IMG/VR virus record: IMGVR_UViG_3300042455_001086
Coordinates: 186,001 to 250,000 of that record
Length of the DNA: 64,000 bases
Reading direction: 5' to 3' (one strand)
Part shown: positions 2,430 to 63,930 of the stretch, piece by piece
How positions within the stretch are numbered: the first letter of the stretch is position 1
Layout of the letters: each line of letters begins with the position of its first letter
The notes under the pieces: generated by a model
What the model was told of the DNA's origin: nothing
The model's database searches: none
The model's input: only the letters and a program-made list of their open reading frames with translations
Position numbers and translations under genes: made by a program

Positions 2430-2471
2430 TTTTTATGTTTTATAAATTTATTGTTCTTTTGTTATAAATAC

Positions 2472-3647
2472 TTATGCAGTATCTTTTTTGACTTTGAAAA
2501 ATCCATATCCGTATTTTTCTAAATCACCAACATTATCAACCTCACCTATTCTCTCAATATACTCCAAAACAGCCTGTTTTCCTCGTTCAACAAATACATT
2601 TGTTTGGACTTCCGGTTGATCTATCACATTCAATAAGCCTTCATTTTTTGTAAGTGCCGACATAACAAGGTCGTCTTGTCTAAATCCAGAAGAATATGTG
2701 ACATATAAGGTATAGTCCTCAAAGTCATAATAGTCAATATTGTTTATCGTATATGATATATATGTGTTTGATGGATCCGGTCCCCAAACTGTTCCAACAC
2801 AACCGGTTGTTCCGGTTACTTGGGTGCCAATCTTGTATTTACCAGCAAACAACATATCTTTTGGACCATATTGTGCCAAATCGTTAATTGACGATTCAGT
2901 AAATCCACTGATAATAAAAGGAACTGAAGTATAATTACTACTATAAAAATCTGATAAATTTGTATTTGAATCACCACTAAAAATATAATCATAACTTATT
3001 GGTGTTCCAGACCAACTTCCCCCAGCCGGAAAAAATACAGCATTACCATTTGGGTTCGGTATTGTTATTTGTGTTACTGGAACTTTAATTGTTTTTTGGA
3101 CAACCGAAACACCCCAAGGTGAGTTAGCTGTCATTGTAATTGTATATGTTCCATTTGATGCCGGGTATGTATGTGTTATTGGTCCGGCCGATGTTAATGT
3201 GATTTCTGGTGTTCCATCACCCCAATTTAATTTATATGTTATAAGACCAAGAAATTTAATCATCTCTTGTTCTGATGTGTTATAAAAAATATAATTATAT
3301 GGGTTTAATGTGTTTGCTGTAAAAATAAAATTATTGATTACTTCTTTTTGTAGAACAGCCCCATCAAATGTTGAGTAATATCCAATATCAACAGCAGATT
3401 GTGTAAATAAAATAGGTATTGTTAATCCTGTGAGTAAAGATGTTCCATTTGTTCCACCAGATAAAAGATCTCGCATTGATAGATAAAGTCCTGTTGTTCC
3501 GGTAATTGTATTCTCGGTTGTTGCAGTAATAAAACAACAATTGTCAATATCATATATTACTTCGGTTCCTGCGGTATATGGAATATTTACCAAATCCGAA
3601 AGTATATTTTCTGGTGATATTTTAAAATAATATTTTTGTTCTTCCAT
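2472..3647 (-). CDS. Virion structural protein with PKD/Ig-like domain
   Basis: LNWGDGT...ITHTYP...GTYTITMTANSPWG is a PKD-domain signature; Thr/Gly-rich. Confidence 0.6.
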   Translation of the reverse strand: MEEQKYYFKISPENILSDLVNIPYTAGTEVIYDIDNCCFITATTENTITGTTGLYLSMRDLLSGGTNGTSLLTGLTIPILFTQSAVDIGYYSTFDGAVLQKEVINNFIFTANTLNPYNYIFYNTSEQEMIKFLGLITYKLNWGDGTPEITLTSAGPITHTYPASNGTYTITMTANSPWGVSVVQKTIKVPVTQITIPNPNGNAVFFPAGGSWSGTPISYDYIFSGDSNTNLSDFYSSNYTSVPFIISGFTESSINDLAQYGPKDMLFAGKYKIGTQVTGTTGCVGTVWGPDPSNTYISYTINNIDYYDFEDYTLYVTYSSGFRQDDLVMSALTKNEGLLNVIDQPEVQTNVFVERGKQAVLEYIERIGEVDNVGDLEKYGYGFFKVKKDTA

Positions 3648-4456
3648 TATGGATTTACATATTCATACCATTTTATCGGATTTGGAGTATCTCCAACCCT
3701 CGTGTTTGTTGAGGTTTCAAAAACCTCATATGTTTTTGTGTTATAGTTCAAATTAACTTTATAGTAAAAATAATCGCTACCCAAGAAATTAAATCTTGAT
3801 GGTAAGATTTGTGGTTGGACTTTATTTGTCATTGTCGCATAAACCCCTCGTCTTCCATTAAAGAATTTTGCTGACATATAAAACTCATTAATGTTTATAA
3901 AATCTCTTTTTCTTAACCAATAAATAAAAAACCCTTCCTTATCTCCAATATAATCCAAGGCAAATTTTGGTTTCTTAATATCAACATTTGGTAATAATGA
4001 TGAAAGTGAAACACTTTCGGTCTGGCCTTGTTGAACCGGTAATATTATTGAGAAATACAAAGTTTGCGTTTTGTCTTCCGGTGTGTCATAAAAATCCAAC
4101 TTAAAGAACGACTTTGTGAATGGTTTTGTAAAATAATAAATATCTGAAGGTGTAAATCCTTGATTTTGATATGATATATCCCAATTGGAGATTGTTAATG
4201 TGCTTGCGGTTATTGGTTGCGAATTATCAAAAAATGAAAACTCATAATTTATTTCTGTTGATTGATTTAAAAATTGATTATGTGTAAATCTTAATGTTTC
4301 AAAATCATTGGCAATCCCAATAACTTCCTTTACCATCTTTTTTTGATATTCTTCAATACTATCATCCCTACCCATAAAATCCCAATTTAATTCAACGGGA
4401 ACATTAACATACTTGTTAGTATCTGGAAGAACAATTTTTATTTTATTCACACTCAT
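3647..4456 (-). CDS. Hypothetical structural protein (269 aa)
   Basis: ORF overlapping both neighbours in the baseplate operon. Confidence 0.55.
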   Translation of the reverse strand: MSVNKIKIVLPDTNKYVNVPVELNWDFMGRDDSIEEYQKKMVKEVIGIANDFETLRFTHNQFLNQSTEINYEFSFFDNSQPITASTLTISNWDISYQNQGFTPSDIYYFTKPFTKSFFKLDFYDTPEDKTQTLYFSIILPVQQGQTESVSLSSLLPNVDIKKPKFALDYIGDKEGFFIYWLRKRDFININEFYMSAKFFNGRRGVYATMTNKVQPQILPSRFNFLGSDYFYYKVNLNYNTKTYEVFETSTNTRVGDTPNPIKWYEYVNP

Positions 4457-6179
4457 CTTCGGTAGGTGTTACAATTTCATTTATGTTTTGTAGGTTAATA
4501 CCTTCTGGATAAACTCTAAATATATAATTAGCGTATGGATAATGTTTTCCGTTCAAAAATGGATAATCCACACCAATATCTGATGTGTCAATAAAGCCAT
4601 AAGTATAAATGTCTCTCCACCTAAAACTATTTGATAAATCCGAATAGTAAGCATAATCCGGAACACCTAAAACACCGTCTCTTGGTGCTTCCTCAATATA
4701 ATCAGAAAATACTCTAATTGTTAATGCTGAATGTGGTCTATAATAATACCCAAGTGGATTTGTTGATGGTGAATCTGATGGAACTTCAAAGAAAGTACCG
4801 TTAAATGTTATTTTATGGTTAATTTCTGATATAACCCTTTCATTTTGTTCATAATCATTCCATTCACAATATGAACCATCAATAACATCACCAACATTTA
4901 AATCGCCATTATAATAAAATGGACCTTCAGGTGGTAATGTTGATGAGTTATATTGTAATTGTGGAATACCTGTTGATGATAATGGATTTGTTTGATCCCA
5001 CCAACTATTTGGTAGGTTATTAACCAATGGAGCATTAAAATCAAAACCTTGTTTTAGATTTTTGGTCCAACCAAAATACCCTTTCCAAATTGTTGTAAAG
5101 TGTAATTCTGTTATTGGTCTTTTTTGATTATCTCTCAATGAGTTAATGTCAATATCACAATTAAACGAAAGTGTATAACTTTGATTTCCTTCTTTTATTG
5201 ATGTTCTTTCAACACCATCTGGTGTAATTACGGCTTTTTCAAGTTTTGATTTTGACCTAAAATTATTAAGTTCAAACCCAGCCTTAACCAATACCGCACA
5301 ATCAGCATTTGTTAAAACTTTATGTTTTCTTACATAATATTTTGAGGTTGTTTCTTTGATATTCTCATTATTTATTATTCTCTTAAAACTACCAATTGTT
5401 CCAGTTTGGAATGTGGTTCCGGTATAACCAACATTATCAATATTAAATATGTATAAATCACTACCATATCCAACATCACCAATACTACTTACTTGAAATA
5501 TACTATTCCCATTGTAGCTAAATGGTAATTTTACATACTCACCAGATTGTAGTCCGTGTTTTACCGGACATTTAAACGATATTTCATTTTGGTTTTGATC
5601 CGTACCAACTGAAATCCTAAATGGTAGTCCGTCATTTGCTGTCCAATACCAAGATGTTTGAGTTTGGGGATCAATAGCGTATAATGGTTTATTGTAGTCA
5701 TTATCATAGACATATGTTATATAATGTGACCAGTTATATGTGCTAGCACTTTTGTTAATAAAAGTTAAATGGTTATTTGGTGGTTTGGTATAACCAACGG
5801 TGTTGTTGTCAGTTCTTATTAAATCAAATTCAAAATATTGGGGATAGCCCTGCCAAGGAATATTTGGATTTGTAATTTGGGAAACTTTATTTTTTATTGC
5901 ATTTGTATAATAAAGATTGTTTCTAAATGGTGCATAAGTTGTTTTCCCAATAAACTCATTTTGAAATATAAAAGAATATTTACAACTTGGTCTAAATACT
6001 GTTGATGATTGTCGTTCTTCGTCAAAAACAGTTTGTAAGCTTAAATCAACATTTCTGTCAAATTCAATAATTTCTTTTTGATTACCATTCAAACTGACAT
6101 CCAATGACAAATTAGTATCTTGTGATGATTTAAATCTTTCACTTCCTAATACTATTGTTGTTGTATTATCTATTCCCAT
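4443..6179 (-). CDS. Hypothetical structural protein (578 aa)
   Basis: Long ORF translationally coupled within the baseplate operon. Confidence 0.55.
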   Translation of the reverse strand: MGIDNTTTIVLGSERFKSSQDTNLSLDVSLNGNQKEIIEFDRNVDLSLQTVFDEERQSSTVFRPSCKYSFIFQNEFIGKTTYAPFRNNLYYTNAIKNKVSQITNPNIPWQGYPQYFEFDLIRTDNNTVGYTKPPNNHLTFINKSASTYNWSHYITYVYDNDYNKPLYAIDPQTQTSWYWTANDGLPFRISVGTDQNQNEISFKCPVKHGLQSGEYVKLPFSYNGNSIFQVSSIGDVGYGSDLYIFNIDNVGYTGTTFQTGTIGSFKRIINNENIKETTSKYYVRKHKVLTNADCAVLVKAGFELNNFRSKSKLEKAVITPDGVERTSIKEGNQSYTLSFNCDIDINSLRDNQKRPITELHFTTIWKGYFGWTKNLKQGFDFNAPLVNNLPNSWWDQTNPLSSTGIPQLQYNSSTLPPEGPFYYNGDLNVGDVIDGSYCEWNDYEQNERVISEINHKITFNGTFFEVPSDSPSTNPLGYYYRPHSALTIRVFSDYIEEAPRDGVLGVPDYAYYSDLSNSFRWRDIYTYGFIDTSDIGVDYPFLNGKHYPYANYIFRVYPEGINLQNINEIVTPTEDECE

Positions 6180-9100
6180 TAGTCTTCCTCTGTTTCTAAA
6201 TATGTTTTTATGAACCGATTTAGTGCTGTTTTACCATTTTTTAAACCAAAGTAGAAATGATTTGGCCCACCAACTAAAAATGGTGTTGAAGTCCCACCAT
6301 TTGGTTCTGGTGTTAAGGTTCCGGTAAAACTATAAAATGGTGTAAAATTGGTTATAAAACCTAAATTTATCGCTGGCGAAGTTGATGTTGGTGTTGTAAA
6401 ATAATCTCCAGAACTTGCATCAAATTGTTGATATTTCTTTTTATAAAATGGTGAAGTTGTGTACCAATTGTTGGTTTCATTACCAAAAATACTTGTATTT
6501 GAATTTAATTTCCACTTATAATTAGGGACTTCTTGTGTTGATTGGTATCCATAATAATCTTGTAATAGTGGTGAAATATTATATATTGAAACACCGGGAC
6601 TTACCGCTCTTCTATTTTTATATTGTTGTTCATTTAAATCATAAAAAATACCAAAAACAGGTTTTCCAGATGTATCTTCACCAAGATAAATTTGATTATC
6701 CGGATAATTCCCACTTATAAATGGATTTATTTCATATTCAGAATTTATAGAAAATGATTGTGCAAAATCACCATCAATTCTGTCCCCTTCTCTTGAAAAG
6801 AACTGATTAACTGAGGCGTCCCCAACACTAAGTAATTGTTGTGCCCAAGTAGAATTTAATAATCTAGAAACAATACCTAATTGTAACAAATCTGAATTAT
6901 CATTATATGTGCTACTTTTTATGGTGTTAATTAAATATTCACCAGAAAAAGTTGGGTTTGCACATATTTCAGCAATAAACTCATCTCTATTACCCAAATC
7001 CATAATTGTTGTTGGAAATAGTATTTGTTTTTCATTTTGTGACTTGTCTGATTGTGGTGCTGGTAATAAACCTGGTAATGCAGAAGTTGGTGCTGGTGGT
7101 AATGCACCAATAAAATTGGTTCCATCCCATGGGGAGCTTCTATAATAGAAATTATTACTTATATCGTTAAAAATAATAATATCATTACAATATTCATAAT
7201 TAGTTACTTGTCCTGTTATATTAAATATTGTTCCTTTATTAAATGTTGGCATATATAATACACCATTTATCCAATTGTTTTGGAACATATGACTAAATAC
7301 ACCACGACATGCGGCAAAATTTATTCTAAACCTTGCAGACCATTCTAAAAATAATTTTATGTCGTCGTCAATACTAGATATATATGGTTTGTTTAATAGA
7401 TAATAGCAACCACCCTTTACTTTATCATCTTTTGAACATTCTTGATTTATACCAAAATTAACACCAGAACCAGTATAACATTTTAACTCAACTAACCCAT
7501 TACAACTTAAAGATTCCACAATTGATGTTCCAATCGCACCAGAATAATCTAAATCTTGTGATACTCCGGTTGAATCTGGACTTGTGGATGTTGTTGAAAG
7601 TGGTGCCGATAATATACCCTCATTTGGTATTTTGTATATTGCAAAACTATTATTTTGGTGTAGTGCAAAACTTGTATTTGGATTACCAACAGATCCTTCA
7701 CTATTCGTTGATGTTGGTAGTCTATCACTTCTCATAATAATACCTTGTGGGTTATTAAAATTAACACCTGGTAGTGTAGAATATGTGTGATAACCAGGTG
7801 AATATAACCACCAATAAACAGGACTCCGATCGTAATCACCACCAATAAATCGATCAGATCTTAATCTTGGACTTATTAAAAATGAACCACCACCAACATA
7901 GTAAGATTCTAATGGAGATATTAAATCATTACCTGCTGTATTTTGTGGTCCTGTTGAATCTGTGAGTTGATCATCTTGACGATTATTTGGGTTTGACAGT
8001 GAATTTCTAAAAGGTAGCATTAGGTTATATACCTTGAAGTCTCCACCAAACGAAAGGTTTTGATTAAGTCTATTTGTTGTTGGTACAATAAGATTATTTA
8101 AATTTAAATTTGTTGCTAATCCTAAATCTGGTCTATAATTACCAGGTAAATTAGAATTATTCCTATCTGTTGATAAATAATAATATGGTAATTTTGAGTT
8201 TGTATTCGTATATTGAGAGAACAACATAGTGTCTGGAGTAAAGGTAAATGATGGATAATAATTTTTTCTATCCGTTGGTGAAACACTTGGTGAATTATCA
8301 TTAGTATTATGTTCAATTGGTTTTAACCCATCAGAATAACCTCTAATTGGATAATTTAATTTAAATTTACCTGAAACTTGGACTTGGTTATGATTTGAAT
8401 AACCAAATATTCGACCTAAACCATATGTTATATTTTGTTTTTCAGTGTAAGGATCCACACCTCTAACTAATACCAAAATACTTAACTGGTCCCACTGTTG
8501 GCATTGTGTAAATAAAGAAGACCAACTTTGGGTATAATCATCGTTTCCATCAAATTGTTCATAATTATATCTTATTCTATGTAAAAGATATTCACTTGGA
8601 AAAGAACCTCTTGTTAAGTTACTTTTATTTAAAAATTCCTGAGTTGTCATCCCAGTCACTACTTGGAAATATTCAATATCACTAACAAATTTATAATTTG
8701 TTTTTGTATTCCCTGTTTGTATGATTTGTATTGTTGTTGATAAACTATTATTAGGATTATTAGGATTAGCATACCAAATTGTTTTTGATATTGTTGTTCC
8801 GGTTGTTGTTGTACCAGTTATAGATGAAGTTCCAAATTCATTTGTTATTGTTCCACCAGTTGAGTCTGTTAATCCTGTTAATCTTATTAAGTCTGGTGAT
8901 AATGCTGGATTTTGAAATGTTAATAAATCTCCGGATTGGAATTCTGATGTCATTCCAACATCACAAAGTAAAATAACGATTTGGTCTTTAAAATTTGGTG
9001 ACCCATTAACACTTGTTGTAATTTGATTAATACCACCAATACTTGATGAGGCACTATCAAAATATTTATCCCTCAAATTAAATGAATTTAATTTTTGTGG

Positions 9101-11509
9101 CCAAGGTTCTGTAACAGGATAACCGAATTCATCCCTACGACGATTACAATCTTCGTTTCTTGTTATAAAAGATCTTGAACCTCTTCTCCAAGAAACTGCA
9201 GGATCGTCAACACCAGAAAAAATTTGATTATAACTATTTGTCGCTTCTAATGTTACACTAGTTGGGCACTCATCCTCATACAACTTATTTAAATATGGAT
9301 TTCTATTATAATTTGCCGTATCTCTACCACATTGGTAATTTGTTGATGTACTAATATTAGCTAATTTTGAAAAATTACCTTCGCCTGTTCCAGATGCAAA
9401 ACTTTCAACTTCATCAAAATCTGATCCCCTATCTTCACACGGACAAGCATCACAATCTGGATATGAAATCATAGGTAATGCAATTTTTGAGAACCCTTTT
9501 TTTGCTATAATTTTTGGTGCTATTTTTATTAAAAAAAAGGCTAATATTGCTGAATAAATCACAATAGCTAAAAGATTACCAATTAACTGACCTAGAGCAA
9601 AGGGTACGGCACCTGCAACATTACTCGCCGCTTGTATTATTAGATAAGTTAGTAATAATGGGATGAATATTACAATAACCCATTTAAAAATTGGCCAAAT
9701 TGCCGCAATAAAATGTGCTAAAGATATTAGAATTATTATTGGAAATTTTAAAATAAACAATAATATACTTACGACAAACTCAATAAAATCAAAATTTCTT
9801 TGTAGGTCATTTACTGGAAATTTATTATTTTCACTCTGACAAGCTCTATTTGTTATTTCTTTTATACCCAAATGTCTTGATCTTCCTTTACCATTTTTAT
9901 ATCTATCAATAAACGAACTTACAGTATATACTTTATTATAATTAAATTCATAAAAAGTATCTTCACAATCAATTGCCGATTGTTTATCCGCATAATCATC
10001 CCAATCCAAACTAAAGGCGTATGATTTTAACACTTCAAAATAATTTTGTGGTAAAAAAGTAATATTAAATGTCTGTGATTGTGTGTCATCAATTGGGTTT
10101 GAGATAAACTGAATTGTGTCGCCAGCGGTAACCGGTATTGATGTTGTATCACCAAAATATGGTTGTCCGTTTATTATAACTGTTAAATTTGATGAATTTA
10201 TTGTATCTTCAAGTAAATAACCACCAGTCCCAACTACTGGTATTGTTGATCCTGTTACAGTTCCAGCTGGTAATGTTACTGTTACTTGAGACGCTGAATT
10301 AGGATTAAATGGGTCGTTCCCAGATGATGTCCATCCGTGTTCTTTTATATTTGGGACAAGAAAATTACCTCTTAAAAAATCATTTTGAATTCCTTGTTCG
10401 TTTTGCCATTTGATTTTAAATCTATATTTTCCTTTAGTTGGTATTCCTTTTTTAGGGTCGTTTGAAATGACTTGTTGTCCAAACTCATTTGTTATAACAT
10501 AATTAATATTCATAGGAATATTAATCATCCATGTTCCATTCTCATCAATTAATTTTCCACCCTCTTCAAATTTAAATTCTTCCAATGCTGGATTTCCGTT
10601 GTTGTCAGTAAAAATTGTTTGCCTAATTGCCAATATTTGTCCAGGACCTGCAATTAAATCACACATATTACCAGTATCATTTTTTGGTTTGCAATTTCTT
10701 TTAATCGCATCTTCATTTGTTGTCGAAACAATTGAACCCATAAAAACCGCTGTTGGTTCAATTTTAATATTTGCTTCGGCCGTTAAATCAAAATCAACTC
10801 TTGTAATACCAAATTGACAAATATCAACATCACCCCAAAATGGTGAAACTTCAACAACTCTATTTAAAGTTTTAATTTGTGGTAATTCACTTAGGTTTGA
10901 AGACGATTTAAATCTATTCCCATTTACTTGTGACGGACTAGCAACACCGGCGTCGATTAAATCTTGTGGTGATAATGAAAAACAACCAATGTCCGATAAA
11001 TCAACATCCATTACCAATGTTTGAGTTCCGGTTGGAACGCCAAATATCATAAAGTCACCACTATCATTTGTCTTTACCGAAAACTTATAATACTTATCAT
11101 ACACTTCAATATATGATTGATCTAGTAAAACTTCTTGTCTTGTTGGGAATGTTCCTGTTGCGGCATGAACCGAATAAGATGGGTCTTTTGGTAATAAATT
11201 ATATCTATAACCTTCTTCATTTAAGTCTGATAAATTTTTATATGGATATAACTCAGAGATTATTGGATTTGTTTCATCCTCTTGTGTTAATGGAACGAAA
11301 ACAGATACTTTAGCGTTTGGAACCCCAAAACCACCATTTACCAATACCCTACCAACAACAACACCATAGTCAGAACAAACTCTTGTATAAATGTCAGATT
11401 CATTTATTTTTAGTGAAAGTATCTCTAACTGGTCAAAATCTTGTTCTAACTTGACATTTATGTATTTGTCTTGACCAATTTCGGTTCTTATTCTATATGA
11501 TTTGGGCAT
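6179..11509 (-). CDS. Large virion/baseplate-associated protein (1776 aa) with N-terminal carboxypeptidase-regulatory/prealbumin-like beta sandwich and internal hydrophobic segment
   Basis: GVVVGRV...GVPNAKVSVF...KTNDSGDFMIFGVPTGTQTL pattern; about 90-aa hydrophobic stretch (FVVSILLFILKFPIII...AFFLIKIAP). Confidence 0.55.
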   Translation of the reverse strand: MPKSYRIRTEIGQDKYINVKLEQDFDQLEILSLKINESDIYTRVCSDYGVVVGRVLVNGGFGVPNAKVSVFVPLTQEDETNPIISELYPYKNLSDLNEEGYRYNLLPKDPSYSVHAATGTFPTRQEVLLDQSYIEVYDKYYKFSVKTNDSGDFMIFGVPTGTQTLVMDVDLSDIGCFSLSPQDLIDAGVASPSQVNGNRFKSSSNLSELPQIKTLNRVVEVSPFWGDVDICQFGITRVDFDLTAEANIKIEPTAVFMGSIVSTTNEDAIKRNCKPKNDTGNMCDLIAGPGQILAIRQTIFTDNNGNPALEEFKFEEGGKLIDENGTWMINIPMNINYVITNEFGQQVISNDPKKGIPTKGKYRFKIKWQNEQGIQNDFLRGNFLVPNIKEHGWTSSGNDPFNPNSASQVTVTLPAGTVTGSTIPVVGTGGYLLEDTINSSNLTVIINGQPYFGDTTSIPVTAGDTIQFISNPIDDTQSQTFNITFLPQNYFEVLKSYAFSLDWDDYADKQSAIDCEDTFYEFNYNKVYTVSSFIDRYKNGKGRSRHLGIKEITNRACQSENNKFPVNDLQRNFDFIEFVVSILLFILKFPIIILISLAHFIAAIWPIFKWVIVIFIPLLLTYLIIQAASNVAGAVPFALGQLIGNLLAIVIYSAILAFFLIKIAPKIIAKKGFSKIALPMISYPDCDACPCEDRGSDFDEVESFASGTGEGNFSKLANISTSTNYQCGRDTANYNRNPYLNKLYEDECPTSVTLEATNSYNQIFSGVDDPAVSWRRGSRSFITRNEDCNRRRDEFGYPVTEPWPQKLNSFNLRDKYFDSASSSIGGINQITTSVNGSPNFKDQIVILLCDVGMTSEFQSGDLLTFQNPALSPDLIRLTGLTDSTGGTITNEFGTSSITGTTTTGTTISKTIWYANPNNPNNSLSTTIQIIQTGNTKTNYKFVSDIEYFQVVTGMTTQEFLNKSNLTRGSFPSEYLLHRIRYNYEQFDGNDDYTQSWSSLFTQCQQWDQLSILVLVRGVDPYTEKQNITYGLGRIFGYSNHNQVQVSGKFKLNYPIRGYSDGLKPIEHNTNDNSPSVSPTDRKNYYPSFTFTPDTMLFSQYTNTNSKLPYYYLSTDRNNSNLPGNYRPDLGLATNLNLNNLIVPTTNRLNQNLSFGGDFKVYNLMLPFRNSLSNPNNRQDDQLTDSTGPQNTAGNDLISPLESYYVGGGSFLISPRLRSDRFIGGDYDRSPVYWWLYSPGYHTYSTLPGVNFNNPQGIIMRSDRLPTSTNSEGSVGNPNTSFALHQNNSFAIYKIPNEGILSAPLSTTSTSPDSTGVSQDLDYSGAIGTSIVESLSCNGLVELKCYTGSGVNFGINQECSKDDKVKGGCYYLLNKPYISSIDDDIKLFLEWSARFRINFAACRGVFSHMFQNNWINGVLYMPTFNKGTIFNITGQVTNYEYCNDIIIFNDISNNFYYRSSPWDGTNFIGALPPAPTSALPGLLPAPQSDKSQNEKQILFPTTIMDLGNRDEFIAEICANPTFSGEYLINTIKSSTYNDNSDLLQLGIVSRLLNSTWAQQLLSVGDASVNQFFSREGDRIDGDFAQSFSINSEYEINPFISGNYPDNQIYLGEDTSGKPVFGIFYDLNEQQYKNRRAVSPGVSIYNISPLLQDYYGYQSTQEVPNYKWKLNSNTSIFGNETNNWYTTSPFYKKKYQQFDASSGDYFTTPTSTSPAINLGFITNFTPFYSFTGTLTPEPNGGTSTPFLVGGPNHFYFGLKNGKTALNRFIKTYLETEED

Positions 11510-11583
11510 TAAATTCTACTTTTTTGATAAATAGTTTATTTCCTATTTTAGAAAAATAAGATTAAAACCCAATAAATAAATTA

Positions 11584-13885: not shown

Positions 13886-13930
13886 ATCCAATAAATATAA
13901 GGGTTGGTTATTTTATATAAACAAAAAAAA

Positions 13931-16105: not shown

Positions 16106-16130
16106 TTTTTACAAATTTAATTATTTTTAT

Positions 16131-17510: not shown

Positions 17511-17544
17511 AATTTTTTCCTCCTATCAGTAATGATAAATACTA

Positions 17545-23051: not shown

Positions 23052-23082
23052 ATATATTATTTATTAAAGTTTTATAATAGAA

Positions 23083-23111
23083 AGTATAATTAAAATTTGT
23101 GTCGCAGTCAA
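23083..23111 (-). promoter_or_regulatory. Sigma70-type promoter for the SSB/UvsX/MTase replication operon
   Basis: Minus strand TTGACT-N17-TATACT, directly after a terminator and about 30 nt before the SSB ATG. Confidence 0.65.
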
Positions 23112-23123
23112 TAAGTTAAAATT

Positions 23124-24078: not shown

Positions 24079-24119
24079 ATTTTTTTTATTATAAATATCT
24101 TATATTTTAAAAAAAACTA

Positions 24120-36211: not shown

Positions 36212-36261
36212 ATCCTATTTTAAAATAAATACAAAAAAAATTGATTTTATAACTCAAAATA

Positions 36262-38256: not shown

Positions 38257-38282
38257 ATTAACTTTTTACAATAAATACTTTT

Positions 38283-40814: not shown

Positions 40815-40846
40815 ACATTTACTATTTCTAATAAATATATGGATTT
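40807..40846 (-). promoter_or_regulatory. Translational-repression hairpin covering the endonuclease start codon, with embedded TATTTAT motif
   Basis: RNA AAAUCCAUAUAUUUAUUA-GAAA-UAGUAAAUGUAUGGAUUU: 18 bp (2 G-U) with a GAAA tetraloop; the AUG at 40814 lies in the 3' arm. Confidence 0.7.
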
Positions 40847-41368: not shown

Positions 41369-41400
41369 TTTGTTTTTTTTAATATTTATGTTTATATTTG
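41369..41400 (+). promoter_or_regulatory. Possible Bacteroidota-type housekeeping promoter
   Basis: TTTG (41369-72)-N20-TATATTTG (41393-400) matches TTTG-N19-21-TAnnTTTG, upstream of the + strand endonuclease; the low-complexity context lowers confidence. Confidence 0.35.
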
Positions 41401-41449
41401 TAAATTATATTATTTACATTACTCATAAATATCTTATAAAGTAAAAAAA

Positions 41450-43980: not shown

Positions 43981-44005
43981 AACAATAAATATTGATTATA
44001 ATAAA

Positions 44006-45557: not shown

Positions 45558-45626
45558 CGGTAAAATATATTTAATAGTTATGAGTATGTCTCTACAAATA
45601 AATATACGAAGATAATATAAAAAAAC

Positions 45627-49034: not shown

Positions 49035-49154
49035 AGATTTTAAATTTTATGTTTTAATTTATTTTACTATAAATATTGTGTTTTTTAGCAAAAACTTTAC
49101 TTACATAAAACTATTTATATTTTGGTGAGAATTTTTTCTACCTTTTTTCTACCT

Positions 49155-50356: not shown

Positions 50357-50357
50357 A

Positions 50358-51564: not shown

Positions 51565-51612
51565 TATTGATAAATATCATTTTATGATTATTTTTATTTA
51601 TATCTTGGAATT

Positions 51613-53373: not shown

Positions 53374-53404
53374 TTTCTTTTAAACTTATTGGTATTTATA
53401 AATA

Positions 53405-55504: not shown

Positions 55505-55524
55505 TATTTATATAAAAAAGAACT

Positions 55525-57017: not shown

Positions 57018-57175
57018 ATTATCTTTGATCCTTTACTCAAATTTTCTTTAGCCCATAGTGGTTGTAGATTTGTGTAATGACAAAGCTTGTAAATTTCTTC
57101 TTCGTTTTTTGCCGATGATAGTGGTATTATGTGGTCAATATGCCAACCATAAAATCCATAATTATCCCAAAACAT
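57014..57175 (-). pseudogene. C-terminal fragment of an HNH endonuclease (53 aa)
   Basis: [53 protein letters not shown]; not in the ORF track. Confidence 0.8.
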
Positions 57176-57308
57176 ACTCTCTAACTAATCTTTCAATTAA
57201 TGTTGAGACCTTGTGACCGTCATCTTTTATTTTTTGATAAAGTTTAGGATCTAAACTTATACCAAATTTTATTTTTTTATCTTCTTGGTTAATTTTTGGT
57301 CTCCCCAT
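57162..57308 (-). CDS. 48-aa ribbon-helix-helix-like protein
   Basis: [48 protein letters not shown]; TATTTAT motif 3 nt upstream. Confidence 0.6.
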
Positions 57309-57355
57309 AATATAAATATCTGTCAGTTTATTAAAGTTTCACTTTTATTAAAAAA

Positions 57356-60148
57356 TTATGAAATAAATTTTTGCATATATGGATCAACATTATCATACAT
57401 ATGATATGGTGAAATGCCAACTTTTTCCCAGAATACAACCTCATCATCCGACATTTCCATAACATCCTCTAATTTATCCTGATCTTTTTCATCAAAAGGA
57501 ACACCATTTATTAACTCACATTGGTCTTTAGTAAAAAATGGTCTATCTTCCGGATTTTTAACCAATAAACCATTTCTAACTTCCTCTTTAAAACAAACAA
57601 GTAATGGTTCCACTCTTTTATTAAATGTCGCAATTGCTCTTTGGATATTATAATCACCAGTAAGTCCTGGGTTACTTTCTAATTCTTTGGGGTCAATTCT
57701 ATAACAATTAAGTTGTATAACTGATCCCACTATATCTGGATTAACTTTTGAATTTGAGAAAAAAGTTTTTAGTTGTTCTTCATTCCACCCTTTCTTTGGT
57801 TGATTTACTTTCTGAACATCTCCGTGTGATGCTTTTGTTCCGTTATTCACATAATAAATTACATCACCAAGACTAACATTAAGGCCTTCTTTAATTACAA
57901 GTTCCATATGTGCTTGTCTTGACATTTCAGCCCCAGCTTTTGTTTTGGTTTTACTTCTTTTGATGTAATCATCAATGGTTTGTTTAATCTTTGCCTTGTT
58001 TGCAATATCCATCAAAGGAATCTTTTGGTCAAATATTTTTTGTAGATATTCGTAATACCATTCAACAAACCCTTGTCCATCACCATTAAGTAAAAGTTTA
58101 ATTCCTTTGTCCAAAAACAATTCAATATATTTTGGCATCTTTTTAGATTTAATCGAATTTCCCGTAAGTTTAACCTTACCTTTATCCGTTAATAAAGCAT
58201 AGTTCTTACGAGCAAGGTTTATACACGCTGGCCAACAGCCGTCTATATCTAAGCCCATCTTTCCACGCATACACATATCATTAAATTCCGCAACATCAGC
58301 GTCAGCACCAAGATATTCTTTACCTTCCTTTACCAACCAGTTAAGACCTTTACCAATATATTTTTTGTTTTCCATTCCTTCTGGTGTTATAAAATTAATA
58401 CCATCAGTATCTAAAATTGTTATTTGATACCCCCTTTCAGTAAAAAAATGAATCATCATTCTTAAATATTGTCTTCCAGTGGTAGTAATCATTTCACCCT
58501 TGTCCATATCACCCCAAGGAAATACTTGTGGTGCTGACAAAGCACCAAAAAGTGAATTGATAAATATTTTTACGGGTAATTGGAAATTATCATATTTTTG
58601 TGAAATTTTCTTATCTTTTGTTTTCCACTCGGCGGATAGATTCTTATACATAATACGAGTATCCCTAAAATAAGATAATAAACCTTTCATTACACCAGTT
58701 ATATCCGATTCTGGGAATACATCGTGTGTTAATTGTATTGATGGATATAGTGATGAGTAGTCAAGTTTTAATACATCCTTTGAGTATCCAGTTTTAAGTA
58801 ATCTTGACAATCCACCAACAAAGTTTCTTTTTTCTTTTTTTGCTGGAATTGCAAGACCATTCTTATACGACCAGGCAAGCATTACAAGTTTCCAGATTGT
58901 GGCGGTTCCCATCGTTGAAACCCTCTCATATGTTGTTGGAAGAAGTGATGCAAGAAGAAAAGATCCTTGGTTGAACTCTTCATCAACAAGTAAAGTTTCT
59001 TCCAAGTCATCGTCCAAGTAACGCTCCACAATATCATCACCGGTTGTTTGAATATAAATGTCAGTTCTTCTTGAACATACCTCATCTATTTTTTCATCAA
59101 TACCAACTTTCTTATATTTTCCGTTTTCAATGTTTAACCAGTATAGGTTTTTTTCCTTGTATAAAGAACCAATCTTGTCGTGGTCAATATACACACGATC
59201 ACTAGCTTCAGCATCAATAAATTTTGTGATGTATTTAAGTCCGGCTTCTTTGATTGAGGAATTAATTGCTTGAGCTCTACGAACTGAATGTATGATGTCA
59301 ATAATGTTATAACCCCACATTTGAGTTTGGGTAAAACTCTCAACTTCGTTTCCTAATTTTAATATTGATTCTTTTTGTGTGATTGATCTTTCACCGTGAA
59401 GTGACTTTGCAACTTTCTTTATATCAAGATTTAAAATCTTACATCTTTCATAAATCCAGTACCAGTCAAAGTTTGCTGAGTTATACCCAGAAATAATTGA
59501 TGGTTTTATTTCATCTATAATTTTAAAGAACTCAACAATACCTTTTCTTTCTTCGTCATCAGTTGAACACTCAATTACTTTACTATAACCCTTATTTGTT
59601 TTAATCCCAATCATAAAGATTCTCCCATCTCTAGGTTCTAGAGATGTGGTCTCAAGGTCAAATACAAGTCGCGTGATGTCGTTGTAGTCTTCAAATCCTT
59701 TGAATAATCTCTTTTCTTTTGAGACTAAGAATTGTTCTGTTGGTGTAAGCATTAAGAATTTATCTCTTACCTTTTCACCCCATGGATCAATTCCACCATC
59801 TCTAAAAAATTGTGTAAGTGCTCTATATCCTTTTAAAGATTTAACAAGGAATGTTAAACCGTTTTCTAATTGTTCATTTCCGTCTGTTCTTAATTTTTCT
59901 ATAATAATACCATACTTGGTCATCGCTTCTTTTTGTAAAGCCTTTGATCCTTGGTAAAAGTTTAACCCTCTTAAATCACCAACCCAAGCAAATGCAATTA
60001 AGCTATCTCTTACAATTGATTTTCCTTTTCCCGGTATTTCTTTGATTTTATAAATGTGGTCTTTTTGATAATCAAACTCTATTGCCACAATGTGTTCTTC
60101 TGGGTCGTTTCCTTCTAGAAACGATTTAATTTCTTCTGCTGTAATCAT
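57356..60148 (-). CDS. Family B DNA polymerase with 3'-5' exonuclease
   Basis: Exo FDLETT, GYNSANFDW, YLDDD; pol LDYSSLYPS, KIFINSLFG, LDTDG, RKNYA. Confidence 0.95.
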   Translation of the reverse strand: MITAEEIKSFLEGNDPEEHIVAIEFDYQKDHIYKIKEIPGKGKSIVRDSLIAFAWVGDLRGLNFYQGSKALQKEAMTKYGIIIEKLRTDGNEQLENGLTFLVKSLKGYRALTQFFRDGGIDPWGEKVRDKFLMLTPTEQFLVSKEKRLFKGFEDYNDITRLVFDLETTSLEPRDGRIFMIGIKTNKGYSKVIECSTDDEERKGIVEFFKIIDEIKPSIISGYNSANFDWYWIYERCKILNLDIKKVAKSLHGERSITQKESILKLGNEVESFTQTQMWGYNIIDIIHSVRRAQAINSSIKEAGLKYITKFIDAEASDRVYIDHDKIGSLYKEKNLYWLNIENGKYKKVGIDEKIDEVCSRRTDIYIQTTGDDIVERYLDDDLEETLLVDEEFNQGSFLLASLLPTTYERVSTMGTATIWKLVMLAWSYKNGLAIPAKKEKRNFVGGLSRLLKTGYSKDVLKLDYSSLYPSIQLTHDVFPESDITGVMKGLLSYFRDTRIMYKNLSAEWKTKDKKISQKYDNFQLPVKIFINSLFGALSAPQVFPWGDMDKGEMITTTGRQYLRMMIHFFTERGYQITILDTDGINFITPEGMENKKYIGKGLNWLVKEGKEYLGADADVAEFNDMCMRGKMGLDIDGCWPACINLARKNYALLTDKGKVKLTGNSIKSKKMPKYIELFLDKGIKLLLNGDGQGFVEWYYEYLQKIFDQKIPLMDIANKAKIKQTIDDYIKRSKTKTKAGAEMSRQAHMELVIKEGLNVSLGDVIYYVNNGTKASHGDVQKVNQPKKGWNEEQLKTFFSNSKVNPDIVGSVIQLNCYRIDPKELESNPGLTGDYNIQRAIATFNKRVEPLLVCFKEEVRNGLLVKNPEDRPFFTKDQCELINGVPFDEKDQDKLEDVMEMSDDEVVFWEKVGISPYHMYDNVDPYMQKFIS

Positions 60149-60208
60149 AATATATTTTTGAGTGGTTCATTTGCTGTCGTGTCAAACGACATTTACCTTA
60201 CCCCAATA

Positions 60209-60237
60209 AATATATTGGATTGGTTGTGTATTGTCAA
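60209..60237 (-). promoter_or_regulatory. Sigma70-type promoter of the DNA polymerase gene
   Basis: Minus strand TTGACA-N17-TATATT, overlapping a TATTTAT motif. Confidence 0.65.
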
Positions 60238-61847: not shown

Positions 61848-62747
61848 TTAGGCATAGTCATTACCAACTGTCCAATACATTGTTGTTCCGTTGTATGTAA
61901 ATGTTATTATATCGGTAGCATTTGCATTTGATGTCAATATTATACCACCACCTCCGTTTGCAACACTATGTGTTACCACACCACCATTAACATTACCTAA
62001 ACTTAATGTTCTTCCACCAACAGCGTCTTGTGTGACAATTAAAGTCCCGTATTCGCCATTTCTTACATTTGTTAATGTTAATGTTGTGTTTGCTGTCAAT
62101 GTTACTTGATAATTTGTGCTAACACCAGAAACATTCCAGTTGAATGAAGTTCCGGTTGAACCGATGTTGGTATATGAACTAATTGGTGTCCCAGTAACCG
62201 ATATTGTGAAGTTTCCATTAGTTCCACTTATTGCAATATTATTACCAGGAGTTAAACCACTAATTGGTAAATTTTGATATGTTGTAGCACTTATTGTTGT
62301 AGCTGTTAAACCTTGTAAAGAAGTATTACCAGTTACAGTTAAGTTTCCATTAACATTTAATGTATTTGCACTTAGTCCACCAGTAAAATTCGTTTCACCA
62401 CTTACAGTTCCACCAGTAAATGATGTTCCGGTTGATCCTGTGAAATTAACACCAAAGTTAGGATATGTTCCAGTAATACTTAAATTGGTTCCTCCACTAA
62501 TACTTACAACCTGATCTGGACTTGTATTTGTTATTGTAAAGTTAGGATATGTTCCTCCAGTTAATATTCCAGTTCCTCCAGATATTGATACTGTATTTCC
62601 GGAATTTATATATGTTTTTAAGTTTGTAATTGTTGTTTGACTTGTTGTTCCACTCAAAACCGTGTAATTTACAATTGGTAATATATCTGTTGGTGTATAT
62701 TGTACACTACTAACAGAAGGTAATTGTGATATTTTTTTATTTGCCAT
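61848..62747 (-). CDS. Tail fibre/adhesin-like protein (Gly/Thr/Ser-rich)
   Basis: MANKKISQLP start, repeated VSISGGT...GTYPNF, C-terminal LIVTQDAVGGRTL...NATDIITFTYNG domain. Confidence 0.6.
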   Translation of the reverse strand: MANKKISQLPSVSSVQYTPTDILPIVNYTVLSGTTSQTTITNLKTYINSGNTVSISGGTGILTGGTYPNFTITNTSPDQVVSISGGTNLSITGTYPNFGVNFTGSTGTSFTGGTVSGETNFTGGLSANTLNVNGNLTVTGNTSLQGLTATTISATTYQNLPISGLTPGNNIAISGTNGNFTISVTGTPISSYTNIGSTGTSFNWNVSGVSTNYQVTLTANTTLTLTNVRNGEYGTLIVTQDAVGGRTLSLGNVNGGVVTHSVANGGGGIILTSNANATDIITFTYNGTTMYWTVGNDYA

Positions 62748-62772
62748 AATTTTTTTTTATAAATACTTGTTT

Positions 62773-63900
62773 TTATGAAGATATTTCTGTCGCAAAGCAA
62801 ATTTCTCCTTTTTCTCTAATTAATCTTTCCATATCATTGAAGGAAATATAAGCTGTGCCATTTATACCCCAACTTCTACCCCAACTATTTTTCATTCTAA
62901 ATATTCTTTTTCTTGTGTCAACACCATTTATCACATAGGCATGACCTCCAAGTAAAGGACCACCAATTCTTATATTTCCATTTCTATCTGGAAAGAACAT
63001 ATTTCTATACCAATTTGTCCCAACCACTACCGGTCCAATATTTAAAACAGAATCAATTAATGTTTGAAGTGTATAACCCCAATAATAATTTCTTACCTTA
63101 CCTACTTGTTGTAGATATTTTACACCACCCCTTACCGAAGTTCCATTATAGTTTTCACCTGGCCATTCATCAAGTTTTTGAGCGTTTTCATAAATTATTT
63201 TAGGTTGAATGATTGGCGCAACACCTGGTTGTCCAATTGGACCGTCTTCCAACCAATGAGCCCAAGAAAAACCAACACAATGCGGTGTATTTCCTTGATT
63301 TCCCCACCATCCATTATCATCCCAATATCTTGATGTTATTGTCACCCTTGATCTTGATGAGGTTAAAAGGTGGTTTTCAATTAAATAATTATTATCCCGT
63401 TCATCTGGCTTATGTGTTCTACCAAGTGGAAATTCTGTTTCGACAACTGTTGTTGTTGCTGTTACTGGAATAACTGGTGTTGAAACACAACAAGGAAATT
63501 CTGAAACATAACAACTTTCATATGGTAAATCATCACCTATAAAACTTTCTTGGATATTAATATATAATTTTTCTCTTATCGGTAAAATTAAAACACCCTC
63601 GTTCTCGGTTCTAAATAAAAACTGACCTTCAAATCTCCCAACCTTATTTGTGTCTTTTGACTGGAATTGGTAATAAACATAATACTCAACCGGAGCATTT
63701 GGATCCGTAAATTCTTTTTTTGTGAAACCAGCCGGCCTTGTCACTATTTTTGGAATTCCGGTTTCAACATCTGACATTGAAAAGAATATTGCTGATTCCT
63801 CAATGAAATTCATAAAACTATTGTAGTCACTTCTACCGTCTTTTACCACTTGAATTTTTAACAATGGTAATGTTGCGTTCTTTTTAATATAAAATTCCAT
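62773..63900 (-). CDS. BppU-like Ig domain fused to a papain-like (C1) cysteine peptidase
   Basis: N-terminal FYIKKNATLPLLK...YQFQSKDTNKVGRFEGQF; catalytic motifs QGNTPHCVGFSW, GGHAYVING, KNSWG. Confidence 0.8.
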   Translation of the reverse strand: MEFYIKKNATLPLLKIQVVKDGRSDYNSFMNFIEESAIFFSMSDVETGIPKIVTRPAGFTKKEFTDPNAPVEYYVYYQFQSKDTNKVGRFEGQFLFRTENEGVLILPIREKLYINIQESFIGDDLPYESCYVSEFPCCVSTPVIPVTATTTVVETEFPLGRTHKPDERDNNYLIENHLLTSSRSRVTITSRYWDDNGWWGNQGNTPHCVGFSWAHWLEDGPIGQPGVAPIIQPKIIYENAQKLDEWPGENYNGTSVRGGVKYLQQVGKVRNYYWGYTLQTLIDSVLNIGPVVVGTNWYRNMFFPDRNGNIRIGGPLLGGHAYVINGVDTRKRIFRMKNSWGRSWGINGTAYISFNDMERLIREKGEICFATEISS

Positions 63901-63930
63901 TTATTGTTTTTACAATAAATATTAGTTTTC

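What the first reader, a model, noticed from the sequence alone, without database searches (positions are those of the whole stretch)
2464..63921. Recurring upstream motif TATTTAT, the reverse complement of the T4 late promoter
Seen: sense-strand TATTTAT lies 3-60 nt before about 20 starts. For minus genes it reads ATAAATA on the plus strand at 2464, 11527, 13891, 17535, 24091, 36225, 38271, 40831, 41425, 43985, 45598, 49069, 51570, 57312, 60206, 62759 and 63915. For plus genes it reads TATTTAT at 41383, 49112, 53393 and 55505. It flips with gene orientation, and some copies are only 3-5 nt from the ATG. Known: the T4 late promoter is TATAAATA on the sense strand. Inference: a phage-specific late promoter recognised by a different sigma factor or activator, sometimes giving near-leaderless mRNAs.
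Basis: partly seen in the sequence, partly recalled or inferred. Interest (0 to 1): 0.6.

Follow-up and report, generated by a model that had tools for sequence, protein, structure and literature searches.

The report
Phage-specific TATTTAT promoter, often leaderless

Summary
All 21 listed copies exist. The whole-window count is at chance (53 vs 53.6), but the copies are concentrated in sense orientation upstream of genes. The window has 20 such copies in 1,752 upstream nt, against 2.1 in shuffles. The 257-kb contig has 99 against 17-19, making TATTTAT its commonest upstream 7-mer.

The motif flips with gene strand, is absent from convergent gaps and operon-internal junctions, and is mildly avoided inside genes. 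One-mismatch variants are not enriched. Orthologous upstream regions of two relatives conserve it (85-100% vs 50-75% in flanks). An A follows 4-6 nt downstream. In about a quarter of sites that A begins the ATG, implying leaderless mRNAs.

A cluster of small early-like genes and the tRNA genes use host-type Bacteroidota promoters (TTG-N19-20-TAnnTTTG) instead.

The contig's RpoD-like sigma has host-sigmaA DNA-reading regions, so it probably reads those host-type promoters. TATTTAT is also enriched in two phages that lack that sigma but share a divergent gp55-like sigma. Complete relatives encode this sigma in a ~40-kb segment missing from this contig, and it is the likeliest reader.

Read in the gene's direction, the motif matches T4's TATAAATA at 6 of 8 positions, so the reverse-complement relation reflects near-palindromy. 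No RNA data were available. "Late" timing is not shown.

The parts
2464..2470 (-). TATTTAT promoter core, 34 nt before the GTG start of gene 1524-2429
11527..11533 (-). TATTTAT core, 17 nt before the 1776-aa gene 6179-11509. A T-run lies upstream. A second copy at 11572-11578 is 62 nt upstream.
13891..13897 (-). TATTTAT core, 5 nt before the ATG at 13885 (refined start of gene 13427-13885). Predicted leaderless.
17535..17541 (-). TATTTAT core, 24 nt before the DnaB-like helicase gene 16131-17510
24091..24097 (-). TATTTAT core, 12 nt before gene 23851-24078. A T-run lies upstream.
36225..36231 (-). TATTTAT core, 13 nt before the 1683-aa gene 31160-36211. It probably heads the operon that includes the 2241-aa gene 24120-30845.
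38271..38277 (-). TATTTAT core, 14 nt before gene 36262-38256
40831..40837 (-). TATTTAT core, 16 nt before the homing-endonuclease-like gene 39231-40814
41383..41431 (.). Divergent gap holding one TATTTAT on each strand: 41383-41389 (+), 60 nt before gene 41450-43066, and 41425-41431 (-), 59 nt before gene 40877-41365. A host-type box TATATTTG lies at 41393-41400 (+), inside a TTG-N20-TAnnTTTG match at 41370-41400. Which of these elements is used is uncertain.
43985..43991 (-). TATTTAT core, 4 nt before the ATG of gene 43147-43980. Predicted leaderless. The terminator hairpin and T-run of the upstream gene end 11 nt before the core.
45598..45604 (-). TATTTAT core, 40 nt before the ATG at 45557 (refined start of the homing-endonuclease-like gene 44034-45557). 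A T-run lies upstream.
49069..49075 (-). TATTTAT core, 34 nt before the tail sheath gene 45681-49034. On the opposite strand, 49112-49118 (+) precedes only a doubtful small ORF.
51570..51576 (-). TATTTAT core, 5 nt before the ATG of gene 51118-51564 (homing-endonuclease-like). Predicted leaderless.
51595..51601 (+). TATTTAT core, 11 nt before the TTG start of the SNF2 helicase gene 51613-53373.
53393..53404 (+). TATTTAT core (53393-53399), 5 nt before the ATG of the SOD-fusion gene 53405-55504. Predicted leaderless. It is part of the 12-nt palindrome TATTTATAAATA, which explains the minus-strand match at 53398.
55505..55511 (+). TATTTAT core, 13 nt before gene 55525-56649
57312..57318 (-). TATTTAT core, 3 nt before the ATG of a 48-aa ORF at 57162-57308
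60206..60212 (-). TATTTAT, 57 nt before the family-B DNA polymerase gene 57356-60148. A less certain site.
62759..62765 (-). TATTTAT core, 11 nt before gene 61848-62747
63915..63921 (-). TATTTAT core, 14 nt before the peptidase-like gene 62773-63900
16112..16119 (-). Host-type Bacteroidota -7 box (TAAATTTG), 6 nt before the ribonucleotide reductase gene 14246-16105. An example of the other promoter class.

Best explanation
TATTTAT is the -10-like core of a phage-specific promoter class that drives most non-early transcription units of this roughly 260-300-kb myovirus of Bacteroidota.

Full anatomy:
- an optional run of 5-8 T ending 11-12 nt upstream of the core;
- usually an A immediately before the core;
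- the invariant heptamer, followed by A or T;
- an A-rich start point 4-6 nt after the heptamer.

[quoted passage not shown] The likeliest one is a divergent, gp55-like two-domain sigma. Complete relatives encode it in a ~40-kb segment that this contig lacks.

The contig's own RpoD-like sigma (genome 162232-163032, outside the window) is a copy of Bacteroidota sigmaA. It more probably serves the second, host-type promoter class (TTG-N19-20-TAnnTTTG), found before the early small-gene cluster and the tRNA genes.

Where the heptamer lies 4-6 nt from the ATG (about a quarter of sites), transcription should begin at the A of the start codon, giving leaderless mRNAs. Elsewhere the leaders would be only about 5-15 nt.

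Shown: placement, strand specificity, sharpness and conservation of the motif; the two motif classes; the sigma genes and their distribution among phages.
Inferred: that it is a promoter, where the start site lies, which sigma reads it, and when.

The confidence of 0.6 is for the whole statement. The promoter role alone is about 0.85, and the gp55-like sigma as reader about 0.55.
For: Placement and strand:
- 99 sense-upstream copies against 17-19 expected; the top upstream 7-mer.
- Tandem gaps 67 sense vs 13 antisense; divergent gaps 20 + 19; convergent gaps 0 + 1.
- 0 of 108 genes with a gap under 10 nt carry it in -30..-1, against 18/50, 29/85 and 16/67 for larger gaps. It therefore marks transcription units, not single genes.

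Sharpness:
- One-mismatch variants are not enriched.
- Sense copies inside genes are depleted: 61 against 83.8 +/- 6.1 in synonymous-codon shuffles.

Start-site signature:
- A is enriched at positions 11-13 counted from the first base of the heptamer (4-6 nt after its last base) in about 75% of sites, even when the ATG is 10 or more nt away. This holds in three genomes.
- Distance to the start codon is bimodal, 4-6 and 11-20 nt, in all three.
- T-runs end at a fixed -13..-11 from the core. Some of them are the tail of the upstream gene's terminator.

Conservation:
- Relatives G001 and G004 (sheath 82% and 71% identical) show 99 vs 20.7 and 69 vs 16.4.
- 71% of orthologues of motif genes keep the exact heptamer, against 11% of controls.
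- Motif columns are 85-100% identical against 50-75% in the flanks.

Two promoter classes:
- The small-gene cluster at genome 106-141 kb almost lacks TATTTAT.
- That cluster and the 24 tRNA genes carry TTG-N17-21-TAnnTTTG.
- No third motif was found.

Not a host signal:
- In 1,055 upstream regions of mostly Bacteroidota chromosomes, TAnnTTTG is enriched (179 vs 50) and TATTTAT is not (36 vs 25; antisense 42).

Which sigma:
- The RpoD-like sigma is 45-51% identical to Bacteroidota sigmaA. Its regions 2.3-2.4 and 4.2 are nearly the host's.
- TATTTAT is also enriched in Flavobacterium phage immuto (32 vs 5.3) and in phage Mel-JY01 (25 vs 5.7). Both lack any Sigma70_r2 match.
- Both share with relatives G001 and G002 a 240-250-aa protein (phmmer 1e-13 to 1e-16).
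- That protein's best solved-structure sequence hit is T4 gp55 (E 0.018).
- Its model matches only sigma factors: gp55 at Z 10.2, rmsd 4.8 A over 119 of 137 residues; sigmaE region 2 at Z 9.3, rmsd 2.6 A.

Precedent: T4 late promoters are one short, highly conserved element at -13..-6 read by gp55. Phage Aeh1 has a changed motif together with a diverged gp55 (PMC1524935).

No RNA polymerase subunit or T7-type polymerase family was found in the contig.
Against: - No transcript 5' ends: no RNA run was listed for this sequence. The promoter role and the leaderless starts are inferred.
- The gp55-like gene is not in this contig. Its presence in this phage rests on synteny with relatives and on the contig being incomplete.
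- Its sequence similarity to gp55 is weak (E 0.018-0.08; phrog_234 E 1e-4 to 8e-3). Foldseek E-values were all above 0.01.
- One phage with a homologue of this sigma (LR756508.1) shows no TATTTAT enrichment.
- In relative G001 the gp55-like gene sits in an operon whose only visible promoter is itself a TATTTAT. What first expresses it is unclear.
- The motif precedes replication genes as well as structural ones, unlike strictly late T4 promoters.
- The host is unknown. A host alternative sigma cannot be excluded.
Confidence: 0.6

Rival explanations
1. The RpoD-like sigma encoded in this contig (266 aa, genome 162232-163032) is what reads TATTTAT.
For: - It is the only clear sigma-70-family gene in the contig.
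- It is conserved in at least 372 related contigs.
- It carries a 20-residue deletion in sigma3 and a 6-residue insertion relative to host sigmaA, which could change promoter geometry.
- The gene just upstream of it has a host-type -7 box (TATCTTTG), fitting early expression.
Against: - Its DNA-reading helices (regions 2.3-2.4 and 4.2) are almost identical to those of Bacteroidota sigmaA. Bacterial upstream regions show enrichment of TAnnTTTG, not TATTTAT.
- Immuto and Mel-JY01 use TATTTAT without any Sigma70_r2-bearing gene.
- TATTTAT promoters show no TTG element at the host spacing.
Confidence: 0.12
2. Host RNA polymerase with a host sigma reads TATTTAT. This could be sigmaA helped by a phage activator that is not a sigma, or a host alternative sigma.
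For: - The motif occupies the same position as the host -7 box and shares its TA and T positions.
- It recurs in three phage lineages, at least one of which infects Flavobacterium.
- No RNA polymerase genes were found.
- T4 middle promoters are a precedent for activator-driven reuse of host sigma (established knowledge).
Against: - TATTTAT is not enriched upstream of genes in about 70 mostly Bacteroidota chromosomal loci.
- The phage keeps two sharply separate classes, with no enrichment of intermediates.
- The early cluster and the tRNA genes avoid TATTTAT.
- All TATTTAT-using lineages share a divergent sigma.
Confidence: 0.15
3. TATTTAT acts not in transcription initiation but at RNA level (a translation enhancer in place of Shine-Dalgarno), or as a binding site for some other DNA-binding protein.
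For: - Many copies lie 4-20 nt before the start codon, the zone where ribosome-binding signals sit.
- Bacteroidota lack Shine-Dalgarno use (PMC6847099; abstract seen).
Against: - None of the 108 operon-internal genes has it.
- Distances range up to 60 nt, with a fixed upstream T-run and a fixed downstream A.
- It is present on both strands of divergent gaps and absent from convergent ones.
- At 4-6 nt spacing it would leave no room for a ribosome-bound leader.
Confidence: 0.04
4. Chance: an AT-rich word in AT-rich intergenic DNA.
For: The whole-window count equals the shuffle expectation. The genome is 30% G+C.
Against: - Composition-matched tests on upstream DNA give a 5- to 10-fold excess (z about 18; no shuffle reaches it).
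- Neighbouring one-mismatch words are not enriched.
- The excess is strand-specific and conserved in orthologous positions.
Confidence: 0.01

Closest known systems
Phage T4 late promoters (TATAAATA at -13..-6), read by gp55 with gp33 and the gp45 sliding clamp
   Same: - A single short, nearly invariant AT-rich element at the -10 position, with no -35 consensus.
- 6 of 8 bases identical in the same orientation.
- Predicted start site within 0-2 nt of the T4 geometry.
- About a hundred copies per genome, each heading a short transcription unit.
- Homing-endonuclease genes carry their own copy.
- A distant gp55-like protein exists in the phage family.
- The tail sheath is T4-like (28% identity).
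   Different: - The two central bases are TT, not AA.
- An optional T-run lies at a fixed distance upstream.
- The candidate sigma has an extra C-terminal sigma4-like domain that gp55 lacks.
- The motif also precedes replication genes.
- Many sites abut the start codon.
- The host phylum is Bacteroidota.
- Dependence on a clamp or a gp33-like factor was not examined.
Phage Aeh1 late promoters (CTAAATA) with a diverged gp55 (PMC1524935)
   Same: A precedent for a T4-type late motif changing together with its sigma.
   Different: Aeh1 changes the first base only. Here the centre of the motif differs and the sigma is far more diverged.
Bacteroidota primary-sigma promoters (TTTG at -33, TAnnTTTG at -7)
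   Same: Same position relative to the predicted start. Begins with TA and has T at the fifth and seventh positions. The phage uses this class too, for early genes and tRNA genes.
   Different: TATTTAT has A where the host box has T and lacks the final G. It has no TTG 19-20 nt upstream. It is not enriched in bacterial upstream regions.
Phage-encoded sigma-70-family factors with their own promoters (Bacillus phage SPO1 gp28 and gp33/34; own sigma-70 genes in huge phages, PMC7162821)
   Same: The phage replaces or supplements host sigma to time its own genes. This phage family carries two sigma genes.
   Different: The SPO1 promoters are bipartite (own knowledge). Cognate promoters of huge-phage sigmas have not, as far as my searches show, been described.

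Membership tests
T4-type late promoter / gp55 system | A single short conserved AT-rich element centred near -10, without a -35 element | tested here: met
   The logo shows an invariant heptamer and no TTG element. There is only an optional T-run, present in about 40% of sites. Position relative to the start is inferred from the conserved A and the ATG spacing, not measured.
T4-type late promoter / gp55 system | Sequence TATAAATA | tested here: not met
   The consensus is (A)TATTTAT(A/T), 6 of 8 identical. TATAAAT itself is not enriched in Mel-JY01 or LR756508.1. In this genome TATAAATA occurs mainly as the complement of sense TATTTATA.
T4-type late promoter / gp55 system | A gp55 homologue encoded by the phage | tested here: inconclusive
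   None in this contig, which appears to lack about 40 kb. Relatives G001 and G002, immuto and Mel-JY01 encode a distant candidate: phrog_234 E 1e-4 to 8e-3; PDB gp55 E 0.018; Z 10.2.
T4-type late promoter / gp55 system | Dependence on a gp33 co-activator and the gp45 sliding clamp | not tested
   No search for gp33 or gp45 homologues was made. Function is not testable with these tools.
T4-type late promoter / gp55 system | Confined to late (structural) genes | tested here: not met
   Also found before DnaB-like and SNF2 helicase genes, probably the DNA polymerase, and homing-endonuclease genes. Timing itself was not measured.
Bacteroidota sigmaA promoter | -7 box TAnnTTTG | tested here: not met
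   TATTTAT has A at the sixth position and no G. The two words form separate classes.
Bacteroidota sigmaA promoter | -33 TTG/TTTG 19-20 nt upstream of the -7 box | tested here: not met
   G is not enriched upstream of TATTTAT. The T-run ends 11-12 nt upstream, and the base after it is mostly A.
Bacteroidota sigmaA promoter | Used by chromosomal genes of Bacteroidota | tested here: not met
   36 observed vs 25 expected, antisense 42, in 1,055 bacterial upstream regions. TAnnTTTG gives 179 vs 50.
Leaderless mRNA | Transcript 5' end at the A of the start codon | not testable with these tools
   Only geometry is available. There are 27 sites in the contig with 4-6 nt between heptamer and ATG, and the same peak appears in two relatives. 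No RNA run was listed.

The most novel reading that the evidence does not exclude
This abundant freshwater clade of Bacteroidota jumbo phages runs a two-sigma programme.

- One sigma is a captured copy of host sigmaA, kept for host-type promoters.
- The other is a gp55-like sigma that still carries a sigma4-like domain, making it a structural intermediate between ordinary sigma-70-family factors and T4 gp55. It reads a one-element TATTTAT promoter without needing a sliding clamp.

A quarter or more of its transcripts would be leaderless. That would be a large-scale use of leaderless translation in a phylum where, in Bacteroides thetaiotaomicron, only about 3.7% of 5' UTRs are shorter than 10 nt (PMC7366714).
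Probability: 0.3. Interest if true: 0.7.

Novelty: new variant of a known kind. Interest (0 to 1): 0.55.

Why it matters
- It gives a testable transcription map for a widespread, uncultured clade of large phages: at least 372 related contigs in IMG/VR. The map separates early and tRNA genes on host-type promoters from the rest on TATTTAT.
- It links that clade to a cultured model, Flavobacterium phage immuto, where the prediction can be tested directly.
- It extends the T4 late-promoter principle (one short element plus a minimal phage sigma) to Bacteroidota with a changed motif.
- It predicts unusually frequent leaderless mRNAs in hosts that lack Shine-Dalgarno-led initiation.
- A seven-base, host-orthogonal promoter and its sigma would be useful parts for genetic tools in Bacteroidota.
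- The heptamer corrects gene starts (13885 and 45557 here) and reveals small genes (57162-57308).

Tried and rejected
Searches that found nothing:
- Megablast of 20 kb of the window against deposited phages: no match.
- Literature searches for TATTTAT as a phage promoter, and for phage sigma factors with Bacteroidota promoters: nothing relevant.
- Public RNA runs: none was listed for window 49000-57400.
- RNA polymerase beta', beta and T7-type families: no match in the contig. The T7-family search had no positive control.
- T4 gp55 as a single sequence, and phrog_234 and phrog_12791, against the contig: no match. This is weakened by the contig being incomplete.

Ideas considered and dropped:
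- A -35-like TTG upstream of TATTTAT: rejected.
- A third promoter class among the remaining upstream regions: none found.
- My early reading that the RpoD-like sigma has altered -10-reading residues (I428, I440, Q441 in E. coli numbering). The same residues occur in host Bacteroidota sigmaA, so the idea was withdrawn.
- The phrog_234 hit in relative G004. It is an ordinary ECF-like sigma with no counterpart in this contig, and was not pursued.

Weak or negative results:
- Foldseek alone gave only weak E-values for the gp55-like model. The VIA-align second look was needed.
- LR756508.1, which has a homologue of the divergent sigma, shows no TATTTAT enrichment.


Full report
**Setting.** The window is bases 186001-250000 of a single 257,166-bp IMG/VR virus contig with 30% G+C. 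It carries a T4-like tail sheath, a family-B DNA polymerase, an SNF2 helicase, a DnaB-like helicase, ribonucleotide reductase, baseplate proteins, three giant ORFs without family matches, and several homing-endonuclease-like genes. It has no close relative among deposited phages. At least 372 IMG/VR contigs are related to it. Start codons are preceded by A-rich sequence rather than Shine-Dalgarno motifs. The phage's SOD domain is closest to Bacteroidota proteins. The genome also holds textbook Bacteroidota promoters. The host is therefore very probably a member of Bacteroidota. This is an inference.

**The observation.** The total count in the window is at chance, 53 against 53.6, so a plain count would dismiss the finding. 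Placement tells a different story.
- In sense-oriented upstream DNA the window has 20 copies in 1,752 nt. Dinucleotide shuffles give 2.1 +/- 1.4, with a maximum of 8 in 1,000.
- The whole contig has 99 copies in 12,955 nt, against 17-19 expected. TATTTAT is the commonest upstream 7-mer, ahead of poly-A.
- It follows gene orientation. Same-strand gaps hold 67 sense and 13 antisense copies. Divergent gaps hold 20 and 19. Convergent gaps hold 0 and 1.
- It marks transcription units, not genes. None of the 108 genes that abut or overlap their upstream neighbour has it in the 30 nt before the start. About a third of genes with larger gaps do.
- Words one mismatch away are not enriched.
- Sense copies inside genes are fewer than synonymous-codon shuffles predict: 61 against 83.8 +/- 6.1.

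**Anatomy.** An alignment of the 99 sites shows the following.
- A run of T ends 11-13 nt before the heptamer in roughly 40% of sites. In about nine sites this run is the tail of the upstream gene's terminator hairpin.
- An A immediately precedes the heptamer in 65 of 99 sites.
- The heptamer itself is invariant and is followed by A or T.
- A is enriched 4-6 nt after the last base of the heptamer, in about 75% of sites, even where the start codon is 10 or more nt away.
The distance from heptamer to start codon is bimodal, with peaks at 4-6 nt (27 sites) and 11-20 nt. With 4-6 nt, the A of the ATG falls exactly on the A-rich position. This is what a -10-type element with a start site a few bases downstream would give, and it implies leaderless mRNAs. 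The longer class would have leaders of only about 5-15 nt.

**Conservation.** I fetched two relatives whole: G001 (296 kb, sheath 82% identical) and G004 (224 kb, 71%).
- Both show the same result: 99 against 20.7 and 69 against 16.4, again the top upstream word, with the same two distance peaks.
- Of the orthologues of motif-bearing genes, 71% keep the exact heptamer, against 11% for other genes.
- In unconditioned pairwise alignments of orthologous upstream regions, the seven motif columns are 85-100% identical and the flanks 50-75%.

**A second promoter class.** A block of small, tightly packed genes at genome 106-141 kb looks like an early region and almost lacks TATTTAT. That block, and the 24 tRNA genes at 45-61 kb, are preceded instead by TTG-N17-21-TAnnTTTG, the known promoter of the Bacteroidota primary sigma (consensus as quoted in PMC7366714). 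Several of these also lie 4 nt from an ATG. No third motif emerged from the remaining upstream regions. As a control I took 1,055 upstream regions from about 70 mostly Bacteroidota chromosomal loci. TAnnTTTG is enriched in sense orientation there (179 against 50 expected; antisense 66). TATTTAT is not (36 against 25; antisense 42). TATTTAT is therefore a phage signal, not a host one.

**Who reads it.** The contig has no RNA polymerase subunit or T7-type polymerase match.

It does encode one clear sigma-70-family protein of 266 aa, at genome 162232-163032. Two results argue against that.
- It is 45-51% identical to sigmaA of Chryseobacterium, Flavobacterium, Flagellimonas and Pedobacter. Its regions 2.3-2.4 and 4.2, which contact the -10 and -35 elements in sigma-70 factors, are almost the host's. 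The main differences are a 20-residue deletion in sigma3 and a short insertion. It looks like a surrogate sigmaA for the host-type class. Huge phages carrying their own sigma-70 have been noted before (PMC7162821).
- The cultured Flavobacterium phage immuto has no Sigma70_r2 match, yet shows TATTTAT enrichment (32 against 5.3), including before its sheath, tube and other large structural genes. Phage Mel-JY01 gives the same result (25 against 5.7).

What these phages share with complete relatives G001 and G002 is a 240-250-aa protein.
- The T4 gp55 family profile picked it up weakly.
- The copies are mutually homologous (1e-13 to 1e-16).
- Its best hit among solved structures is T4 gp55, colinear over residues 2-145 (E 0.018 and 0.079).
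- Its AlphaFold model (pLDDT 78) matches only sigma factors in the top 50. These include gp55 at Z 10.2 (rmsd 4.8 A, 119 of 137 residues) and sigmaE region 2 at Z 9.3 (rmsd 2.6 A).
- It has a C-terminal sigma4-like domain that gp55 lacks.

**Why it is not in this contig.** No copy of the gp55-like gene is found here. However, in G001 the gene lies in a ~40-kb stretch that sits exactly between the orthologues of this contig's two ends. In about 20 related contigs it lies 6.5-9 kb beyond the homologue of position 2.5 kb. The contig's 'inverted terminal repeat' is a 127-bp exact inverted repeat inside coding-like sequence. The contig is therefore probably incomplete, and the CheckV figure of 100% should not be trusted.

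**Relation to T4.** T4 late promoters are TATAAATA at -13..-6. They are read by gp55, and phage Aeh1 has a changed motif together with a diverged gp55 (PMC1524935). That is true, but the T4 motif is nearly palindromic. In the direction of transcription the present motif matches it at 6 of 8 positions, differing only in the two central bases, and it sits at nearly the same distance from the predicted start. The architecture is also that of T4 late promoters: one short invariant element, no -35, and many copies. The likeness is functional and probably evolutionary. Membership in the strict T4 system is not established, because the sequence differs, the sigma is only distantly related, clamp dependence was not examined, and the motif is not confined to structural genes.

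**Weak points.**
- No transcript data were available.
- The candidate reader is absent from the contig in hand.
- Its homology to gp55 is remote.
- One homologue-bearing phage, LR756508.1, lacks the motif.
- In G001 the candidate's own operon seems to start with a TATTTAT, so how it is first expressed is open.
- My gene calls come from a simple ORF and codon-bias procedure. Start-codon errors would blur the distance statistics, not create them.

**Verdict.** The interpretation as a phage-specific promoter with frequent leaderless starts is well supported by sequence evidence (about 0.85). 'Late' should read 'post-early'. The finding is a new variant of a known kind.

Noticed in passing
whole contig; ends at genome 1-127 and 257040-257166 (outside the window): The contig's 'inverted terminal repeat' is a 127-bp exact inverted repeat in coding-like sequence. 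Complete relatives have about 40 kb of genes between the orthologues of the two ends. The record is probably an incomplete assembly despite a CheckV estimate of 100%.
   Followed up: partly
genome 162232-163032 (-), outside the window (L001:1081-1881:-): A phage-borne copy of Bacteroidota sigmaA: 266 aa, 45-51% identical to host sigmaA, host-like DNA-reading regions, and a 20-residue deletion in sigma3. The gene just upstream (177 aa, unknown function) is preceded by a host-type box TATCTTTG.
   Followed up: partly
genome 45454-61069 (-), outside the window: 24 tRNA genes in arrays. Several arrays are preceded by near-identical copies of a host-type promoter (TTG-N20-TATCTTTG).
   Followed up: partly
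window 57162-57308 (-): An unlisted 48-aa ORF, 3 nt after a TATTTAT. By eye its sequence resembles a ribbon-helix-helix DNA-binding protein. This was not tested.
   Followed up: no
window 39231-40814 (-), 41450-43066 (+), 44034-45557 (-), 51118-51564 (-): A cluster of homing-endonuclease / HNH / Mom-like genes, two of them paralogous (both match phrog_3339). Each has its own TATTTAT.
   Followed up: no
window 53405-55504 (+): A 699-aa protein with a complete Fe/Mn superoxide dismutase in the middle (residues about 166-355) and unknown flanking regions. Its nearest cellular relatives are Bacteroidota (46-55% identity).
   Followed up: partly
genome 65-96 kb and 137 kb (e.g. 78919-79293, 79312-79623, 88973-89467, 94481-95479, 137374-138603), outside the window: A family of genes whose products all begin MKIIITES..., most with TATTTAT 4-6 nt before the ATG. 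An ECF-like sigma in relative G004 has the same N-terminus.
   Followed up: no
Flavobacterium phage immuto, NC_055915.1, about 60-76 kb (L116): About 16 copies of a long conserved early-type promoter: AGTTGC, 18 nt, then TATATTTAGGTATCAATAATTAAAAC. They lie before small genes. Its -10-like part, TATTTAG, differs from TATTTAT by one base.
   Followed up: no
window 24120-30845, 31160-36211, 6179-11509 (all -): Three giant ORFs (2241, 1683 and 1776 aa) with no Pfam match and no DxDGD-type polymerase motif. Function unknown.
   Followed up: partly
window 22185-23051 (-) upstream, about 23052-23130: The SSB-like gene lacks both promoter classes. It has a sigma-70-looking TTGACT-N17-TATACT upstream, preceded by a terminator-like hairpin.
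   Followed up: no
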